64,000 nucleotides of DNA from Cyanophora paradoxa CCMP329 (Eukaryota; Plantae; Glaucophyta), in contig QPMI01000022.1 in NCBI GenBank assembly GCA_004431415.1, positions 124,001 through 188,000 of the forward strand. Direction: 5' to 3'. Positions 13,745-22,647 of this stretch are shown piece by piece. How positions within the stretch are numbered: position 1 is the stretch's first letter; each line of letters opens with the position of its first letter. A program made the translations under genes and the position numbers. The notes under the pieces were generated by a model. That model made no database searches and was not told where the DNA came from. It saw nothing but the letters and a program-made list of their open reading frames with translations.

Positions 13745-16700
13745 TTAGAAGAAATGCGACTTCAACTTGGTCGTGGCCTGCGCTTGCGCCTGGAGGCGCC
13801 GCGCCGCCTCCTTCTTGGCCGAGCGCTGCGCGTACTGGCCGTGGGCCGCCCCTTTGAGCTTGCTCCGCGTCTCCCGCGGCCGGCCCGGGCCCCGGCCCCG
13901 CCGCGCTTCCTCCTCCCGGCGCCTCCGCTCCTCGTCCTCCTCCTCCCGGCGCCTCCGTTCCTCGGCTCGGAAGCGCTCGCGCCGTTCCTCTGTCAGGCGC
14001 CGCTCATCCGCCCGGCGCCGCCTGTCGCGGATGCGTCTGACCGCCCTCTCCGCTTCGGTCCGCGGCCCGCGGCTGCTCCTCCTCTTCTTCGGGCCGGGAC
14101 TCGGGCCGGGGCCCGGGCCGGCCCCCCGCTTTAGCTTCTTCTCCTTGGCCGACGACGCTTCGTAGTCCTCGGGCGAAGGCGGCGGGCGCCGGCGCTTCGT
14201 GTTCGAGGGCGGCGGGGCCGCCTCCTCCCCCCCCTCCTCCTCCTCCTCGTCATCCTCCCCCTCCTCGTCATCATCCACCGCCTCCACCTCCTCCTCCTCC
14301 TCGCCAGGCGGGGCAGCCCGATCAGAGCCGCGGGGGCGACCGAGAGAAGGCCGGGCCGCACCTCCTCCTCCTCGCCCTCCTCGCTCTCGTCCTCATCCTC
14401 CTCCCCCTCGTCCTCCTCGTCTTCTTCCTCCTCGTCCTCGTCCTCTTCGACCTCCCTGTAGCTCGTCACGCGGCGGAGGCTCCTCAGCGCCCCACCGCCC
14501 CGCGAGACACGCCCCTCCTCCTCCTCCTCCTCCTCCTCCTCGCGCAGCCGCGCCCTGGCCCGCTTTGCCGGCGGCGCCGAAGGCTCATCCTCCTCCTCCT
14601 CCTCCTCCTCCTCTGGCTTGCGCCGGCGCCTTGCCGGCCTGCCGCGGCGCCTGCTGGCCCCGGCGGGCGACCGCGGCACCTCCCCCTCCTCTCCGTCCTG
14701 AGCAAGGCGAGGGGGAGAGAGTACAGGGTACACGATCAGAGCCGAAGAGAAAAACTGCGCGGAAAAAGCGCACCGAGGAGGCGCCCTCCTCCTCCTCCTC
14801 TTCCTCGTCCTCTTCATGCGTGCGCCTCGACCGTTCCCGCTGCCGCTGCCGCTGCTTCACGGCTGCGGCTGCGGCTGCGGCTGCGGCTGCGGCTTGGGAG
14901 CCGGGCCGGCCGCCGGCGCCGACGCCGGCGGCCCGGGAGGGAGACGGGTGCGGGGGGTCGAGCCGCGGGAATGTGCGGAGGAGGGCCGGGGTGCGAGCGG
15001 CCGCGGCCCCCTCGCCCTTCCCCCTGGCGTCGCTCCGGCCCCACCGGCCCTCGTTCCGGTCGCCCCCGGGCTCCTTCCTTTCGAGGGCCGGAGGAGACGG
15101 TGCCGGTACCGCCAAGGCCGCGAGCCGGGTGGAGAAGCGGGCGGAGGGGGCCGGGTCGGAGTCGGGGGCGGGGGCGGGGGAGGCCCGAGGGGGCGCTGGC
15201 TCGGGGGGGAGGGGCTGGCTTCTCCCTGGAAGACGGGGCGGCGGCGGCAGGGGCCGCGGGGGCGGCACAAGCAGCGGCTTTCCCTGCAAAGGAGAAGGAG
15301 AAGGAGTGGGCGACGGACGCCGCGGCGCCGCCGCCGCCGCCGCGGGCGCTGCTGCGCCGACGACGGCCCTCGGAGGCGGCGAGGGGGCGGGCTGGAAGGC
15401 GAAGGGCGCGGGCGGTCCCGCCGCGCGCGGCGGGGCGCCGGCGGCGGGGGGACGGTAAATCGGGGGCCCGCGGGGCAAGGCGGCGGGGTGCATGCGGGGC
15501 ACGGGGCCCTTAGGGCCGGGGCCGGGGCCGGGGCCGAGGCTGGGGCCGGATGCGAAGCGGGGGGCCGCCGCCGGGACGCGGGCCGGGGCTCCAGCTCCGG
15601 CTCCGGCTCCGACTCCCGGCGCGCGACGCCCGCCAGAGGCCGGCCGCGCTCTCTGGTGGGGTACGCTTCGATTAGGAGGGGGGTCTATTTATAGGAGGGG
15701 CGAAGGGGGCGGCAGTGGCACAGCGTACCCGGAGGTTCGTGCCGCGCAGCGCAGCCTCCTCGATCCTGCGAGGGCGGATCAGGTGAGGAAAGGGGGTGAA
15801 TCAGATGAGGATGGGGTACGCTCACTCTTCGGGGGTAGGGGCGTCGATCTTGAGGTTGTTCGCGAGGGCGAAGACGCCGCAGAAGCTGCGCGGACCCGTC
15901 CAAGGCGACGTCAGGCCGGGGGGGTGTACGGGGTAACGGCGAAGCCCTAACGTGGTGTGGTGGGGGATACGGCAAAGGGCGCACCGCGCGGACGTGTCGG
16001 GCTCCGGCTCCGCCCCGTGCTCCAGCAGCTTGCCCTGTACCCCCAAAGTAAGATCCGGTAAAAGCCAAGAAATGGGGGTACGGACCTGGATGAGGACGAC
16101 GTCGCCGTGGCGGGGGTACAGCTTCGTGCCGAGGCCGGGAAGGACAAGGGGGTGCAGGTCCACGTCCGGGATTCCCGTCGGCTGCGCCGAAAGCCTCGGT
16201 CAGGACAGAAATGAGGAAAGAAGAAAAAGGGGGGTACGTGGCAGTAGATAAGGGCGGCGAAGGACCCGAGCGCATCGTTCTCGTCCGTGTGCAGCGCCGA
16301 GGAGCTGGGGTGAGGGGAGTTAGTTTCGGGGGGGTACAGGGGAACGAAAGGGGGGTACTGCAATGCCGGGTTCAGGTAGAAGCGGGACCAGAGGCCGTAG
16401 TGGCAGGGGAGGATCCGCCCCGAGAACCCCCCCATCGCGTGCCGCGCCTGCAGATGGGGGTAAGGGAAAGAAAGTATTCGAGGGGTGGGGGTACAGCGCG
16501 CCATGTAGCGGGAGGCGTCCGGGGCGAGCCGGGCGGTTGCGTACCAGAGGCGGCGGAGGAGCGGCCGGAGGCGCCTGTGGTGCTCGGGGAGGCGGGGGTC
16601 CTCCAGGGTCCGCCCGAAGGCCTTCATCAGGCGGATCTGTACCCCGAGCGTAAGAGTCTCCTTCGGCTAAGAGTAAGAGAAGACCGGAGCGTGTTTCCTT

Positions 16701-19700
16701 CATAGGAATCTCTCCTCTAGAAGAATCTCGCCTTTAGAAGAATCGTGTCTCCGGAGGAAGAATATAAAGGAATCTCTCGAGCAGGGGCGCACGGGCGTGG
16801 GGAGCTTGCAGGAGCCCCGGTTGGTGCCCGTGCTCATGAAGGGGCCGCGCACCCCGCTGCTGCGAAAAGGGGGCGTCAGACGCGAAGCGAGGTGGCCCGG
16901 TCTGCGCCCCGGCACATGCACCTGTTCTTCTCCTTGCGCGGCTTCGCAGCACCGTTTTGGGGGGCGCCAGGCGGTGGCGGCGGCGGCGGGGGCCGCGGGC
17001 GGGGAGGCGCCCTGGCCGCCGCGTCTGGGACGCGCCCGCCGGGGCACGATGCCGCATCGGCGCACAGCAGGCCCCTCTGCAGCAAAGAATGCACCGCCTG
17101 CAACGTCGACGGAAAAGGGGGTACGGAAATCATAAGCACAGTGGGGGAATCTCGGCGGGGAGGGTACCGCACGTCAGCGCTGGCCGCCGCCGTCGGCGTC
17201 GTGCTGAAGGGCATCGACACACCGGCGAAGGCGAATGCGCCTGCCCAGATTCGAACCCGCGCCCGGCGGGGGTACGGATACTTATCGAAGCGGCGCACCT
17301 TTGACGGCGGCGCTGGCGAACTCGTCCGCGAACAGTCCGGGGAGCCTGCAGGGCCTTAGAGGAGGGAAAAGAGTTGACGGAGAAGGCTTAGAAGACCGCG
17401 GGCGGGTACCAGCAGAGCACGAGACCGTCGTTGAGGCAGGAGATCCCGAAGTGCTTTCCGCGCTCCAGTACTCCCGGCAACCCATGGCCCTCCTAGGATG
17501 CCATAAGATAGAAGAAGCGGCGTCGGAGGGGGGTACGCCGTTCAGCGCGCACGCAGCGGTGCATGTCGAAGGAGCGCTGATCGAGGGGCGTGCGGGGGTA
17601 CGGCACCTCCACCCGAATGAGGCCGGCACCCCCCCTGGCCCTGTCCACCATCCCCGCGATGCGCCCAGCGAGGCCGGGGGCCTCCCCTTCGAAGAAGGCG
17701 TCCGCCTCTCCGGCCCCTCCCTCCGCCGCCTGCGCATGTTTCAGCTAAGGCTTAAGAGGGGGGTACGGGAGGTGTCCGGCTCGCCTGCAGCGCGTCGAGG
17801 GCCTCGCCGACGAAGTCGTACCCCCCGCAGAGGCTCCGCCACTCGGCGGTGGGGCCCTCCCCCGCGTTGGCCCCGAGAAGCCGGGGCAGCTGCGGCGAAA
17901 ATGCAAGTGAGCGGGCGGCAATCGACCGCGAGAACGCTAAATCAAGGACCTGGTACGATCGCTCGCCCCAGCGAAAGGAGGCGGAGCAGTCGTCCATGCG
18001 CCCGACTTGGCTCGCCGGGCGGGGGGCGGAGGAGGAGACCGAAGGCCCAGCCTGCGGTTCGGATTCGGGATCCGGCCCGGGCGCAGAAGGCGAGGAGGGA
18101 GGCGAGAGCTGAGGGTCCGGGGGATGCTGTGCGGGAGGCGGGGGCGGGGTGGGGCGCGGCGCCGGCGCGGCGGCCGGCGCGGGCGGCAGCAGGAAGGAGG
18201 GGGGCGGCCGGGTCGAGGGGTACCGCTGCTGCTGCTGCTGCAGGGAAGCCGCGGCCGGGGGGAGCCAGGAGGACGAGGAGAAGGGGGAGGAGGAGGAGGA
18301 ACGGTTTGAGGGCTCGGGCGGAGGCGGGGGTACAGGCTGGCCGCGGGAGGAAGAGGACGAGGAGGGGGAAGCGAAAGCGGAGTCGGCGCCCGGAAGAGAA
18401 GGCGGGGGCGGGGCGCTCGGGACGAAGGGGACGGCGCCGGGCGCGCGGGCCGAAGCCGCTGCCGCAGGCTCGCTGGGCTGCGAAGGGCGACGGGGCGGAC
18501 CACCGGCGTGGCTGGGGGAAGGGCCGCGGGGCTCCGACGGACTCGCTTGCCCTTGCCCCGGCCCTCGGATAGCCGCTGCGAAAGGGCCGGTCTGGCTGCC
18601 TGCGCAGGCGCCGGCGCCGGCGGGGGCGCCGGGCCGCCGCTGGCGCCGCCGGCGAAGAGGCGGGGCGGGACGCTTCCACCCGCTGCGAGGGAGGCGGGGC
18701 GGGGCCGGGGCCGGGGCCGGGGGAGGCTCCGACGGACTCGCTGGACCTGCAATAGGGTCCGGTCTGGCCGCCGCCGCCGCCTCCGCCTCCGCCGCCGCCG
18801 CCGCCGGTCGGAAGCGCCGGGCCGCCGCTGGCACCGCCGCCGGCTGAGACCCGCCGGAAGAGGCGGGACGCCAGTCTCCCGCCCGCTGCGAGGGATGCAC
18901 GGGCGCCGCCTCCCGAGGCGGGGGCGGGGGCGGGGGCGGGGCCGGGGGTGCCGAGGAGGACAGCGGGGTGGAGGAGGGGGCGGCCGCGGAGGCCAGCATC
19001 GCCAGCCGACGACCAGGGCCCGCCTCCCGGGCCCCGTCGAGGCCGAGAGGCTGCCGCGGGGCCGGCGCGGTCGCAGGCGGCACCGGCCCCAGCCGCTCTG
19101 AAGCCTCCTCGAGTTTCTGCGGCGGGGGCGCCGTCTCCGCTGCGGGTGGCTTATTCTTCCGCGCCCGCCGCTTCCGCGGCGTCTGCTCCGGCGGCGGTGG
19201 CGGCGGAGGCGGCAGCGCCGGCGGCAGCGGCGGCAGCGGCGGCGCCGGCGGGGCGCGGCGGGGGTGAGGAGGCGCCGAGGTGGGCCCCGGGCACCGCCGG
19301 CCCGGGCCGCTCGCCCCGAGGAAAGGCGGGGGCGGGGGCGGAAAGGGCCCCCAACCCGCCTTCAGCGCCTCCTGCGAGACGGCCATCGCCAGAGCAGCCT
19401 GGAACCCCGCATCGCCTGGAGGCCGCGAAACGTGGAATGTGGGCGGCGGAGGCGGGGGTGGGGGCGGGGGCGGCGCTGCGGGGGCCGACGGGGCGGGCAC
19501 CGGCCCCGTCCACTGAAACGCGGGCGGCGGCTGCGAGGGCGGCGCTGGCGGGGGCAGAGGCGGGGGCAGAGGCGGAGACGGCGGCCCCGCGGCAAGGGCC
19601 GACTGGGGCGGCAAAGGGCCCGGCCAATCCCGCGCCTCCTGAACCGGCGGCGCGAACGGCGGCCAAGCGGCCCCTTCCGCGCCGCCGGCGTGAGCGAAGG

Positions 19701-20800
19701 GAGGGATCAGGGACTGGGGCTCGGTCCCAGACGGGCTGAAGTGGGGGGGCGAAGGGAAGAACGGCTGGGCTGGGGGCGGCGACCGAGCCGGCGATGCCGC
19801 CGCGTTGGGGGCGTGGTGGGATGGGTGCTGGAAGGGGTACGGCGCGCCGGTGGGGGCCCGGGGAAGGTCCGGTGGCGGGGGCGAGGAGAAGAAGTGGGGC
19901 GAGGCTACGAAGGGACGGGCGGGGGACGGCGAAGGGGCGATAAAATTGAATGGGAAAGCGGGCGGGGCGTTCTCCGGGGGCGGAGGGGGCGACGTCGTCG
20001 CGGGGTACGAGCACGGAGAATTGTGGGGCCGGGTAGGGTACGGCCCCGGCCCAGCTCCAGACTGGTCGAAACGCGCGCCCGGCGAGGCAATGTTTGCTTC
20101 GGAAAACTGTGGCTGACGCTGCGTGTTGCCCTGGTGGTACGGGTGCGATTCGGCGAACTCGATACGGTGCGAGGAGGCGCCGGTCACGACCGGGTGCTGC
20201 AGCTGCTGCATGTGCTGCTGAACGGGCGATCCGCGAGAAGCTAAGGGCGTCGGTGCTTCGCCGGCGTTGCCGCGGCTGTAGCTGTTGCGCTCCGCGCCGC
20301 AAGCGCTAGCGCCGAAGTAGCTGGGCGGCAGGCCCGGGGTCGATGCCGCGCTTGCTGGGGAGAGCTCTTGAACAGGCGTCATCTGGCTGCTACGCGCCGC
20401 ACGCGCGACCGGCGTGTGATCGCCGGAGGGCGCGGCTCGCGCTCCGATTACGTCAGCGCTGCAGCTCGGATAGCTTGGGTGGCTCTGGTGATCGCTGATC
20501 GCGCTGAACATGAAGTCGCAGTGCTGCTGTGGCTGCCTCTTGCCCTCGATCGTCGCCAGACCTCTGCCCCACCCCAGTCTGCGCTCTAATCGGTGCGCGG
20601 ACCGTCCCGGCGTCCCCAAGGAGCGTATGAGCGCGTACCTTTTCTGATTCGACGGCGCCGCGTGCGATGCGGAAGCCGTGTGTCGCCCGGACGACGCGGA
20701 GAGCGCCTCAGCGCCAGGCTCCACTGGCCCGTGCGAGGGCGTCGCGACGGGAGCGCCCCATGCATATGCGAACGCGTCGCGTGAATCCGAATGCATCGCC
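13745..20800 (-). CDS. Large low-complexity protein with a central TET/JBP-family 2OG-Fe(II) dioxygenase domain (~15850-17460)
   Basis: Spliced core: GLVLCW|LPGLFADEF...LRPLLRRLWYATARLAPDASRYMAR...WSRFYLNPALQ..SSALHTDENDALGSFAALIYCH...LVLPGLGTKLYPRHGDVVLIQ..GKLLEHGAEPEPDTSAR|FCGVFALANNL. This gives HxD (His at 16289-16291), the distal His (16017-16019) and the terminal R-x-x-x-V-F strand. Flanked by a ~1000-aa Pro-rich N-terminal exon and an acidic/basic C-terminus. Joining all parts into one gene is inferred. Confidence 0.75.
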
Positions 20801-21340
20801 GGCGAGCTCTTTGCAGCCCTCGCCTGCACACCACTACCCCCTTTCCTGGGCACGCATACCCGGGCAGCGGCATGCACGTATGCCGCCGCCGGCCACATGC
20901 ACGGCGCCGGCCGGCGCCACGTGCACGCACTTTATCTGCCGCGAAGGGGCAAGACTAGTCCTAGGGCCGGATCGAAGGGAGGGCCGGCCGCGGACCGGAT
21001 CGAAGGGAGGGCCGGCCGCGCGGGGTACGGTATACGTAGGCCGAGGTGCACATGGGGGAGGACCCGCAGCGTGAGGGCGCAGGGGGGCGAGAATTGCGAA
21101 ACCCCGGGCCCAGCCCATTAACGTTGACACTCCGCGCCGCCGCCCTCCCCCCTCCTGCTCCCTCATGATCAACCCCCTTCAGCTTCTCCCAGCCTCCCGG
21201 AACCCGAAGCCTCCCGGGCGCCAGCTCCAGCATGCCGATCGCGAGCGCTCGATGCTTGGTGGGATTCGCGGAGACCGAGCCGGCGAGCTGGCGAAGAGCT
21301 TCGGGCGCAGCGAAGCCGCCGGCGCCCGCCTCCCGGGCCC

Positions 21341-22647
21341 CTACTCGACGCCGAGGGTCTTCAGCCGGTCCGCGCAGAGGCGCTGGATCGCCCTCACGTC
21401 CTCCGCGTTCAGGTCCTGCGAAAGAAGGCTGTGAGCGTAGGGGGATTCGGGGAGGGGGGTACCGGTACCTTCAGGAGGTGCTTGATGGCCGTAATGGTGT
21501 GACCCCGCTGCGAGCTGTGCGAGCTGCCCGCGGCCGTCGCCGCAGCGATCGCTGCCGCCGCCGCGGCGGCCCCGGACTCCGCCGCCGCCGCCGCTGGCGC
21601 CGCCGATCCCGACGGCGCCCGCTCGGGCTTCGCTTGGGGCGCCCCCGAGCCGGCGGGCGAGAGGGGTACGGCGGGGGAGGAAGGGGCGCGGGCGGGGGGG
21701 GAGGAGGCCGCGGGGGCGAGGGCGGCCGCGGGGGCGGAGGGCGCCGAAGGGAGGGAGTTCGCCCAGGGCAGCTGGACCGACTCCGCCTGTCTTCGCTCCG
21801 CGTCCGTCTGCGGCGTGCGAGAGAGAGGAGGCGGGGATCAGGAGGGGGCGCGGCGCCCCGGGGGTACAGCGCGCGCACGATGGCGGAGTTGTCCAGCGTT
21901 TGGAGGTGAGGCAGCGCCTTTATGCAAACGTTCCTGTAGTTCGGCAGCTGCTCGATCGGGTTCTGCAAGGACCGCGGGGCGTCAGGGCGAGCGGCACAGC
22001 AACCCGCGGCCGCAGCGCGCTAGGCAAGCGGGCGCCTGGTTGAGGGACAGGATGGTGAGCTGGGGCAGCTGCGCGCTGCGCGGACGCGCGTGAGCGGCGG
22101 GCGCGCGGCGCGGCTCACGGGGCCGGAGCGGACGCACAGGTGCCGTAGCTCCGACAGGTCGCTGACGGCGTTCTGCAGCAGCGGCGGCGGCGGTCAGCTG
22201 CGCGCGGCGCGGCTCGCGGGCGCAGCGTGCCTTCCGCAGGAAGAGCTCGCGTAGCTTCGTGCATTGCGCGAAGGGCGAAAGGTCCCGCACGCGATTCTGC
22301 GCCGCCGCGAACATCGACGGGCCATCGCGGCACCCTGCGGACGCGGCGCTTGCACGCACGTCCACCAAGGTGACGACCTCGATGTTCTTCGTCTTAGCTA
22401 GCAGGCCGACGTCTGCGGCGGCGGGCGTTGGGCTCGCTTCGGCTAATCAAAACGGGGCTGGGTGTCGGTCGAACCTGCGAGGCCCATTCCCCAGAGGTTC
22501 GCGTTCACGACCTGCTCCAGGCTGGAGGCATTCTTCACCCTGCCGCGCGGCGTCACGGGGCTGCGAGCTCAGCGAACGACAGCTGACGCGAATGGGACGG
22601 GCGACGGCGCACCTCACGAGGAGCACCTCCGGCGTCAGCGTCGTCAT
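21341..22647 (-). CDS. CFAP410: Cilia- and flagella-associated protein 410 (C21orf2/LRRC76) homologue
   Basis: MTTLTPEVLL..ASSLEQVVNANLWGMGLA|DVGLLAKTKNIEVVTL..NRVRDLSPFAQCTKLRELFLRK|NAVSDLSELRHL..QLPQLTILSL..NPIEQLPNYRNVCIKALPHLQTLDNSAI, plus the conserved C-terminal helix pair HTITAIKHLLK|DLNAEDVRAIQRLCADRL*. Confidence 0.9.

What the first reader, a model, noticed from the sequence alone, without database searches (positions are those of the whole stretch)
15850..17460. TET/JBP-type nucleic-acid base dioxygenase hidden across about ten small exons
Seen: no single ORF shows it, but splicing gives helix LLRRLWYATARLAP, then SRFYLN..SSALHTDEND, LVLPGLGTKLYPRHGDVVLI..LLEHG and RFCGVFA. Established: this is the layout of the TET/JBP family (N-x5-6-H-x-D-x-x-D; L-x-F/L-P..GD..H-G; R-x-S-x-V-x-Y), which oxidises 5mC or T, and the Chlamydomonas homologue CMD1 makes a vitamin C-derived base. 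Inference: this organism may carry an oxidised or novel DNA/RNA base. The domain is embedded in well over 1000 aa of predicted disorder with no obvious DNA-binding domain.
Basis: partly seen in the sequence, partly recalled or inferred. Interest (0 to 1): 0.8.

Follow-up and report, generated by a model that had tools for sequence, protein, structure and literature searches.

The report
Spliced algal DNA-base dioxygenase-like gene
A transcribed, many-exon gene of a glaucophyte alga encodes a long, mostly disordered protein whose middle carries the iron-binding core of the enzyme superfamily that oxidises or repairs modified DNA/RNA bases. Whether it is a TET/JBP-type or an AlkB-type enzyme could not be settled here.

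Summary
Observation confirmed. RNA-derived contigs from two studies splice the small exons with GT/GC..AG introns. One frame stays open through all 14 exons (1,354 nt); the other two have 4 and 2 stops. HTD, the distal His and the Arg are therefore in frame in mRNA.

Interpretation partly supported. No library or database search recognised any exon or in-frame exon group: Pfam, NCBIfam, PHROGs, PDB, 1.84 billion representative proteins, word search, ESM Atlas, viral and metagenome contigs. These tests have little power on short pieces.

I also scored the exons separately against two profiles, keeping neighbouring exons in register.
- Against a verified Pfam Tet_JBP phage clade: 10/3000 and 4/3000 shuffles reach the real score.
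- Against an E. coli-type AlkB clade: 2/1500.
- True AlkB and true phage TET pieces do not cross-match (z about 1).

A 2OG/Fe(II) double-stranded beta-helix core is thus reasonably supported, but TET/JBP versus AlkB is not resolved. Spacing and the missing AlkB hallmarks favour TET/JBP mildly.

The joined protein was not searched or folded, because it has no reference.

This scan has already noted TET/JBP-like genes at several other places in this genome. This one is more divergent and had no gene model on record in the searches made.

The parts
20639..20898 (-). probable first coding exon, taken from the first ATG (20898-20896) of the long open frame
   Evidence: ORF 17752-20898; stop-to-stop piece 17755-20931; RNA contigs cover 20639-20839 and splice 20578/20639. 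The start codon is inferred.
20579..20638 (-). intron, 60 nt, GT..AG, in frame
   Evidence: pieces of RNA contigs in X2 and X3 end at 20578 and resume at 20639 (table 8); intron ends checked
17785..20578 (-). large exon, about 931 codons, proline/alanine/serine-rich (P 25%, A 16%, S 12%), no Pfam domain
   Evidence: fragmentary unspliced RNA contigs lie along it
17730..17784 (-). inferred GC..AG intron (55 nt) joining the large exon in frame to the catalytic region
   Evidence: The RNA contig pieces stop at 17726 but the contigs run on 34-102 nt further. A donor CAG|GCGAGC at 17785/17784 with acceptor CAG|GCG at 17730/17729 explains the 3-letter offset and keeps the frame (sequence, ends).
17553..17729 (-). 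exon 1 of the central region
17410..17492 (-). exon 2 (contains RGKHFGIS; its best placement in the phage TET/JBP profile is on RSRTFGYA)
17299..17345 (-). exon 3
17173..17240 (-). exon 4
16922..17097 (-). exon 5, with a proline-rich low-complexity insert
16793..16859 (-). exon 6
16502..16636 (-). exon 7, the helix-like LLRRLWYATARLAP segment
16448..16501 (-). GC..AG intron, 54 nt, in frame
   Evidence: The length arithmetic of contig X2 record 8 needs a 54-nt gap here. The only canonical ends in the 5-letter ambiguity are GC..AG.
16359..16447 (-). exon 8, GFSG...LWSRFYLN (W-x5-N = 16370-16393)
   Evidence: placed on LWTSGVVN of the phage clade
16238..16304 (-). exon 9, with the iron-binding HTD (16283-16291) followed by END
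   Evidence: its best placement is on HRD of the TET/JBP clade and on HQD of AlkB
16086..16181 (-). exon 10, LVLP (16137-16148) ... HGDVV (16095-16109)
   Evidence: its best placement is on LHLP...VVF of the phage clade and on LLEHGDVVV of AlkB
15985..16034 (-). exon 11, GKLLEHGAEP with the distal His (16017-16019); its last two bases CG begin the Arg codon
   Evidence: placed on GKRLVHGVTP, exactly contiguous with exon 10 in the profile
15826..15885 (-). exon 12, (R)FCGVFALANN, the last core strand
   Evidence: on its own it is not placed at the expected profile site
15729..15765 (-). exon 13
14585..15652 (-). last exon as far as can be read: open frame to TGA at 14585-14587, 355 codons, A/P/G-rich
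   Evidence: RNA contigs reach only to 15388-15448, so the 3' part is inferred and could hold further introns.

Best explanation
One minus-strand gene (about 20898 to 14585, at least 16 exons, about 1,750 codons if the first ATG is used) encodes a protein that is mostly low-complexity. Roughly the first 1,000 residues are P/A/S-rich and the last 355 are A/P/G-rich. About 190 residues in the middle, split over six small exons (16636-15826), form a double-stranded beta-helix Fe(II)/2-oxoglutarate dioxygenase core.

Shown: the splicing, the open frame and the transcription; an intact His-x-Asp ... His triad with an Arg 11 residues after the second His; and placement of these residues on the catalytic residues of two reference families.

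Inferred: the protein binds Fe(II) through His (16289-16291), Asp (16283-16285) and His (16017-16019). It holds 2-oxoglutarate with the Arg and oxidises a base in nucleic acid. The most likely type is a very divergent TET/JBP enzyme acting on 5-methylcytosine, a substrate that exists in this alga's DNA. The disordered flanks would then serve targeting or regulation.
For: Splicing and frame.

Catalytic motifs.

Exon-by-exon placement on a Pfam-verified Tet_JBP phage clade. The seed was Cooper gp2, which PMC12730594 names as a TET/JBP member.
- The independent best placements of exons 9, 10 and 11, and the second best of exon 8, are collinear and nearly contiguous: columns 150-157, 165-168, 189-207 and 210-219.
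- hhalign's best local matches fall on the same two sites.
- Register-constrained score 46.2 against 37.6 +/- 2.7 for shuffled exons, reached by 10/3000 shuffles; 4/3000 when only the Pfam-domain columns are used.

The same test on an AlkB clade gives 44.7 against 34.7 +/- 2.7, reached by 2/1500.

Controls are flat. Reversed profiles, reversed exons and upstream exons give z of -0.4 to 0.7. Real AlkB against the TET profile, and the reverse, gives z about 1.1. The two signals are therefore largely independent and together support the superfamily.

Points favouring TET/JBP over AlkB:
- The segment from LxLP through GDV and G to His aligns without a gap with NgTet1 and gp2 as printed.
- The Arg lies at +11 from the distal His (NgTet1 +10, AlkB +17).
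- W-x5-N precedes HxD, as in the phage clade.
- AlkB's second Arg and its N-x-Y are absent (consensus).

Cyanophora has DNMT1 and DNMT3 and CpG methylation on transposons and viral inserts (PMC12344493).
Against: No standard tool recognises the sequence.
- Pfam, NCBIfam and PHROGs give nothing on exons or in-frame exon groups.
- PDB phmmer gives nothing.
- phmmer over 1.84 billion representative proteins gives 0 hits.
- Word searches give none; the Atlas gives none.
- HMMER with the phage-clade profile ranks the true exons among the noise.
- An unconstrained exon chain is not significant (z 0.86).

AlkB scores as well as TET/JBP.

The last strand reads R-F-C-G-V-F-A: Cys replaces the usual Ser, and no aromatic residue stands six after the Arg.

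The joined protein was never tested.
Confidence: 0.45

Rival explanations
1. It is an AlkB-type dioxygenase: an oxidative demethylase of alkylated or N-methylated bases in DNA or RNA, such as 1mA, 3mC or m6A. It would not be a TET/JBP enzyme.
For: - E. coli AlkB is among the best single-sequence matches in the register test (z 2.95).
- The AlkB clade profile gives 2/1500.
- Exon 9 ALHTDEND falls on SLHQDKDE, and exon 10 KLYPRHGDVVL on RLLLEHGDVVV, only one residue out of register.
- The His-to-His distance is 55 residues (AlkB 56, TET clade and NgTet1 50).
Against: - The AlkB hallmark R-x5-R (RYNLTFR in the consensus) is R-F-C-G-V-F-A here.
- The N-x-Y before HxD is N-P-A.
- Three indels of 2-6 residues are needed in the C-terminal half, against one for NgTet1.
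- Pfam 2OG-FeII_Oxy_2 does not match any piece. Eukaryotic AlkB homologues are usually easy to detect.
Confidence: 0.2
2. It is a DSBH 2OG dioxygenase of another or a new clade, for example a protein hydroxylase or a small-molecule oxygenase. It would share only the generic core with both reference families.
For: It matches two families about equally well, although those families do not match each other. It has no relatives at E <= 0.001 among 1.84 billion proteins. Family-specific residues of both families are missing.
Against: YbiX (prolyl-hydroxylase type) and TauD give weak or no signal (z 1.66 and -1.14). The W-x5-N and LxLP..GDV..G..HG spacing is that of TET/JBP.
Confidence: 0.2
3. There is no enzyme here. 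The motifs are a chance constellation in a lineage-specific, largely disordered protein, or the domain is a decayed, inactive copy.
For: All library searches are blank. The sequence is rich in G, R, P, A and L, which cheapens several motif positions.
Against: - Two largely independent profile tests each give about 1e-3, with flat controls.
- The triad and the Arg are intact.
- The core exons are much more hydrophobic than the flanks: 34% ILVFMWYC against 12-17%.
- The gene is spliced and keeps its frame across 13 introns.
Confidence: 0.15

Closest known systems
Naegleria Tet-like dioxygenase NgTet1 (PDB 4LT5, 5CG8/5CG9)
   Same: The segment L-x-L-x11-G-D-V-x-h-h-x-G-x4-H aligns with exons 10+11 without a gap, read against the NgTet1 residues printed. 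The Arg lies 10 (NgTet1) against 11 (here) residues after that His. An acidic residue stands five after the first His (from memory of Hashimoto 2014: D234; not checked here).
   Different: NgTet1 is a 321-residue stand-alone domain; this protein has about 1,750 residues. No significant sequence match was found. The aromatic and His residues of the last strand (VYFAH in NgTet1) read VFALA here.
Mycobacteriophage Cooper gp2 clade (Pfam Tet_JBP, PF12851)
   Same: Of the clade's invariant residues, these are present in nearly the same spacing: W155, N161, H169, D171, L193, P196, G214, H219, G220, P223, R233 and V237.
   Different: About 30 other clade-invariant positions differ. HMMER and hhalign give no significant score. 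The phage proteins are about 300 residues long and intronless.
E. coli AlkB and the 2OG-FeII_Oxy_2 family
   Same: LHxD(K/E)(D/N)(E/D) after the first strand; (E/R)HGDVV(V/L); HG at the distal His; a His-to-His distance of 55-56 residues.
   Different: It lacks the second Arg of R-x5-R and the N-x-Y that binds 2OG. The loop lengths differ at three places.
Metazoan TET1-3 and Chlamydomonas CMD1
   Same: As in animal TETs, the catalytic core sits in a very long, largely disordered protein and carries a low-complexity insert. As with CMD1, the host is an alga that methylates cytosine.
   Different: No CXXC or Cys-rich domain was seen. The low-complexity insert lies before the core rather than between HxD and the distal His. 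Nothing here bears on the co-substrate; the conserved Arg suggests 2OG rather than ascorbate.

Membership tests
TET/JBP (Pfam PF12851, 2OGFeDO nucleic-acid base dioxygenases) | His-x-Asp iron ligands on the first conserved strand | tested here: met
   HTD at 16283-16291, in frame in spliced RNA contigs. The best placement of exon 9 is on HRD of the phage clade.
TET/JBP (Pfam PF12851, 2OGFeDO nucleic-acid base dioxygenases) | Distal His followed by x and a small residue in the penultimate strand | tested here: met
   E-H-G-A at 16017-16019 and following. It is placed on V-H-G-V, contiguous with exon 10.
TET/JBP (Pfam PF12851, 2OGFeDO nucleic-acid base dioxygenases) | Arg pairing the C5 carboxylate of 2OG, opening the last strand as R-x-S-x-V-x-aromatic | tested here: inconclusive
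   The Arg is present (split codon CG|C), with Val at +4 and Phe at +5. However, Cys replaces Ser and Ala replaces the aromatic at +6. Exon 12 alone is not placed at this site.
TET/JBP (Pfam PF12851, 2OGFeDO nucleic-acid base dioxygenases) | Second Arg contacting C1 of 2OG (R1261 in hTET2, R224 in NgTET1), called strictly conserved in 5mC dioxygenases (PMC8256090) | tested here: inconclusive
   The residue five before the HxD His is His, not Arg. An Arg lies 13 residues before it (SRFYLN). Equivalence cannot be judged without a structure.
TET/JBP (Pfam PF12851, 2OGFeDO nucleic-acid base dioxygenases) | Significant match to the family profile | tested here: not met
   Pfam gives no hit at E <= 10 on any exon or in-frame exon group. 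Power is low: Cooper gp2 itself scores 26.6 bits, below the cut-off of 34.9, and its HxD half scores nothing. The joined protein was not tested.
TET/JBP (Pfam PF12851, 2OGFeDO nucleic-acid base dioxygenases) | Collinear, in-register similarity of the core to verified members | tested here: met
   Exon-by-exon register test: 10/3000 and 4/3000 shuffles reach the real score; controls are flat. This is not specific, because AlkB does as well.
TET/JBP (Pfam PF12851, 2OGFeDO nucleic-acid base dioxygenases) | Oxidation of 5mC or T in DNA | not testable with these tools
   Needs an enzyme assay and nucleoside mass spectrometry.
AlkB (Pfam PF13532, 2OG-FeII_Oxy_2) | HxD...H triad with (E/x)HGDhhh before the distal His | tested here: met
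   ALHTDEND falls on SLHQDKDE and KLYPRHGDVVL on RLLLEHGDVVV. Register test 2/1500.
AlkB (Pfam PF13532, 2OG-FeII_Oxy_2) | Two Arg in the last strand, R-x5-R (RYNLTFR) | tested here: not met
   The sequence reads R-F-C-G-V-F-A, against the clade consensus LRYNLTFRK.
AlkB (Pfam PF13532, 2OG-FeII_Oxy_2) | N-x-Y 9-11 residues before HxD (LINRY) | tested here: not met
   The sequence reads Y-L-N-P-A: Asn is present, but there is no Tyr two residues on (consensus).
AlkB (Pfam PF13532, 2OG-FeII_Oxy_2) | Significant match to the family profile | tested here: not met
   No Pfam or PDB hit on any piece. The joined protein was not tested.

The most novel reading that the evidence does not exclude
The core belongs to a separate, so far undescribed clade of nucleic-acid 2OG dioxygenases that resembles both AlkB and TET/JBP. 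It is embedded in a 1,750-residue disordered protein and makes an oxidised or otherwise unusual base in glaucophyte DNA or RNA.
Probability: 0.15. Interest if true: 0.7.

Novelty: new member of a known kind. Interest (0 to 1): 0.4.

Why it matters
Glaucophytes methylate CpG in transposons and viral inserts (PMC12344493). The full-text search found no paper linking Cyanophora with TET/JBP. An active base dioxygenase would give this early-branching alga a route to remove or rewrite 5mC, or to repair alkylated bases. It would also add a data point on how often such enzymes were recruited in the plant lineage.

On method, the case shows that a catalytic domain split over six exons of 16-45 codons escapes every standard library search.

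The value of this locus is tempered in two ways. The scan already holds several TET/JBP-like loci in the same genome, and the family of this one is unresolved.

Tried and rejected
Searches that found nothing:
- Pfam, NCBIfam and PHROGs on ORF pieces, in-frame exon groups and single exons. The only hits were a weak CHAD match on exon 7 and a ribosomal P1 low-complexity match on the tail.
- PDB phmmer on halves and on single exons.
- phmmer of the HxD half against 1.84 billion representative proteins: 0 hits.
- Word-index search of the HxD half and of the end of the large exon.
- ESM Atlas on both halves: low recognition, nothing usable.
- Viral and metagenome contigs by peptide patterns, and one exact 30-nt exon word.
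- Exact-product look-up of the large ORF: not on record. No gene model of this locus could be fetched.

Profile work that led nowhere:
- HMMER with all filters off, using the phage-clade profile against six-frame pieces and single exons: no signal.
- A free monotone exon chain: z 0.86.
- Chaining the upstream exons 1-7: not significant in either family. A subset (exons 2, 6, 7) gave z 2.95 for TET only, but it was chosen after the fact and I give it no weight.
- Two rounds of widening the phage clade in IMG/VR stayed within one tight clade, so no broad TET/JBP profile could be built.

Other checks:
- A transposon context was looked for. Only low-complexity repeats appear within 11-24 kb, and neighbouring ORFs have no transposase Pfam hit.
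- The sandbox holds no profile libraries.

Left out:
- Structure prediction, because the spliced protein has no reference and half a beta-helix carrying intron-coded loops would not fold meaningfully.

Full report
**What is there.** The window is GC-rich (55-79%). I did not verify the organism; the sequencing runs are coded.

- Three runs from two studies carry one contig of about 1,371-1,388 nt that covers 15448-17726 with the introns removed. The fourth run is unspliced over the same stretch and behaves as DNA.
- Twelve printed joints have GT..AG ends on the minus strand.
- A thirteenth intron, 16448-16501, follows from the contig's length arithmetic. Its only canonical reading within a 5-letter ambiguity is GC..AG.
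- The introns are 51-156 nt long.
- The only computation I made on joined exons was a count of stop codons in a script: one frame has none over 1,354 nt, the others have 4 and 2.
HTD is at 16283-16291 and the distal His at 16017-16019. The Arg comes from a split codon CG|C, which is Arg whatever its third base.

His refuter, "cDNA lacks the HxD/H/R exons in frame", therefore fails.

**Extent of the gene.**
- The RNA contig pieces stop at 17726, but the contigs run on for 34-102 nt. A GC..AG intron at 17730-17784 (donor CAG|GCGAGC) explains the three-letter offset exactly. It joins the 931-codon exon 17785-20578 in frame.
- A further intron, 20579-20638, is seen in RNA. The first ATG of the frame is at 20898.
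- Downstream, the last exon stays open to TGA at 14585. RNA support ends at 15388-15448.
- With these limits the protein has about 1,750 residues: about 1,018 N-terminal (P 25%, A 16%, S 12%), about 385 central, and 355 C-terminal (A 21%, P 21%, G 14%).
- The six core exons hold 34% hydrophobic residues, the flanks 12-17%.
- No Pfam domain is found in the flanks.

**Standard recognition fails.** I searched the spliced model exon by exon and as the two in-frame exon groups that have a reference. These are 16238-16636 (three exons plus two in-frame introns) and 15825-16181 (three exons plus two in-frame introns). The joined protein has no reference, so I did not search, profile or fold it.
- Pfam, NCBIfam, PHROGs, PDB, the ESM Atlas, the word-index protein search, and the viral and metagenome contig scans all returned nothing relevant.
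- phmmer of the HxD group against 1.84 billion representative proteins gave no hit at E <= 0.001.
- No gene model of this locus is on record.

These blanks are weak evidence. A bona fide family member, gp2 of Mycobacteriophage Cooper, is named as TET/JBP in PMC12730594. It reaches only 26.6 bits on Pfam Tet_JBP, below the gathering score. Its HxD half scores nothing, and it finds NgTet1 in the PDB only at E 0.3-0.45.

**An exon-by-exon test against real family members.** From gp2 I collected 120 relatives, many of them carrying PF12851, plus 80 IMG/VR loci, and built a clade profile.
- HMMER and hhalign found no significant match to the alga's pieces. hhalign's best local alignments did fall on the expected sites: GLWSRFYLN on LWTSGVVN, and QGKLLEHGAEP on KGKTLVHGVTP.
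- I then scored each exon separately against the profile. The independent best placements of exons 9, 10 and 11, and the second best of exon 8, are collinear and nearly contiguous: columns 150-157, 165-168, 189-207 and 210-219. They coincide with the clade's W-x5-N, HxD, LxLP...V and G-x4-HG-x2-P.
- A statistic that sums the best segment of each of exons 8-12, while keeping neighbouring exons within six columns of a common diagonal, gives 46.2 against 37.6 +/- 2.7 for exons shuffled internally. That score is reached by 10/3000 shuffles, or by 4/3000 when only the columns that Pfam matches are used.
- Reversed profiles, reversed exons and upstream exons give z between -0.4 and 0.7.

I ran the same test with E. 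coli AlkB and a profile of 80 AlkB relatives.
- AlkB does as well: single sequence z 2.95, profile 44.7 against 34.7 +/- 2.7, reached by 2/1500 shuffles.
- ALHTDEND falls on SLHQDKDE and KLYPRHGDVVL on RLLLEHGDVVV, one residue out of register.
- TauD gives nothing and YbiX little.
- Real AlkB cut into the same pieces does not match the TET profile, and gp2-type pieces do not match the AlkB profile (z about 1.1).

The alga's exons therefore resemble each family more than the families resemble each other. I take this as two largely independent signals, each near 1e-3, for a nucleic-acid-type 2OG/Fe(II) beta-helix core. I do not take it as evidence for either family.

**Which family.** These points lean to TET/JBP:
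- From LxLP to the distal His the sequence aligns without a gap to NgTet1 and gp2, as printed by HMMER.
- The Arg lies 11 residues after that His (NgTet1 10, phage clade 15, AlkB 17).
- W-x5-N precedes HxD, as in the phage clade.
- Val stands four after the Arg, the position of the Val that PMC8256090 lists as conserved.
- The two AlkB hallmarks, R-x5-R and N-x-Y, are absent (consensus).

These points lean the other way:
- The acidic HxD(E)(N)(D) and HGDVV strings are AlkB-like.
- The His-to-His distance is 55 residues (AlkB 56, TET 50).
- The last strand lacks the Ser and the aromatic residue of TET/JBP.
- The residue where NgTET1 has its second Arg is His.

My split is TET/JBP-type 0.45, AlkB-type 0.2, another or a new DSBH clade 0.2, and no enzyme 0.15.

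**Context.** I found no transposase, terminal repeats or recombinase within 11-24 kb. Only low-complexity repeats are present. Unlike other TET/JBP-like loci that this scan reports in the same genome, this one does not look like transposon cargo. I could not fetch those loci, so kinship with them is untested. One of them is also described with a GC-AG intron next to its HxD motif, which would be worth comparing.

Cyanophora has DNMT1 and DNMT3 and CpG methylation on transposons and viral inserts (PMC12344493), so 5mC is available as a substrate. A full-text search found no paper that links Cyanophora with TET/JBP.

**Verdict.** This is a real, expressed, highly split gene whose central exons most likely encode an active-site-intact 2OG/Fe(II) dioxygenase of the nucleic-acid-modifying kind. 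The TET/JBP label is plausible but unproven. The claim of a novel base is speculation. The decisive step is a profile and fold analysis of the spliced protein, followed by enzyme assays and nucleoside mass spectrometry.

Noticed in passing
window 16448-16501 and 17730-17784 (minus strand): Two of the 15 introns of this gene appear to be GC..AG. The first rests on contig length arithmetic, the second on a 3-letter alignment offset. That is a high share for one gene.
   Followed up: partly
introns 16035-16085, 16637-16792, 16182-16237, 16305-16358 and others; whole window: Many introns carry GTACCCC within their first 10 nt, and some end in GGGGTACAG, so the two intron ends are complementary. 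The window holds 58 GGGGTAC and 32 GTACCCC. This could be used to predict strand and intron positions in this genome.
   Followed up: no
window about 21400-22450, minus strand: Open pieces with high third-position GC read like leucine-rich repeats (for example ...LQNPIEQLPNYRNVCIKALPHLQTLDNS...). This is probably the next gene upstream. It is not a transposase.
   Followed up: no
window 13745-14817, minus strand: Overlapping open frames are extremely rich in Glu/Asp and Arg/Lys runs, directly downstream of the last exon. It is unclear whether they are a separate gene or further exons.
   Followed up: no
window 15434/19328, 18186/18598, 18365/18608 and others: RNA contigs show joints and loose ends between GC-rich low-complexity stretches, with non-canonical ends and sides of about 20 nt. 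I read them as assembly cross-joins between similar repeats, not as splicing.
   Followed up: no
P0016, P0018 (relatives of L001:785-1750): Some actinophage homologues of Cooper gp2, a Tet_JBP-type dioxygenase, are named 'queuine tRNA-ribosyltransferase' in their GenBank records, and others 'oxidoreductase'. The first name looks like a mis-annotation.
   Followed up: no
L001:785-1750: Cooper gp2, used in the literature as a TET/JBP example, scores 26.6 bits on Pfam Tet_JBP, below the gathering score of 34.9. All of that score comes from its C-terminal half. Pfam thresholds therefore miss divergent members of this family.
   Followed up: yes
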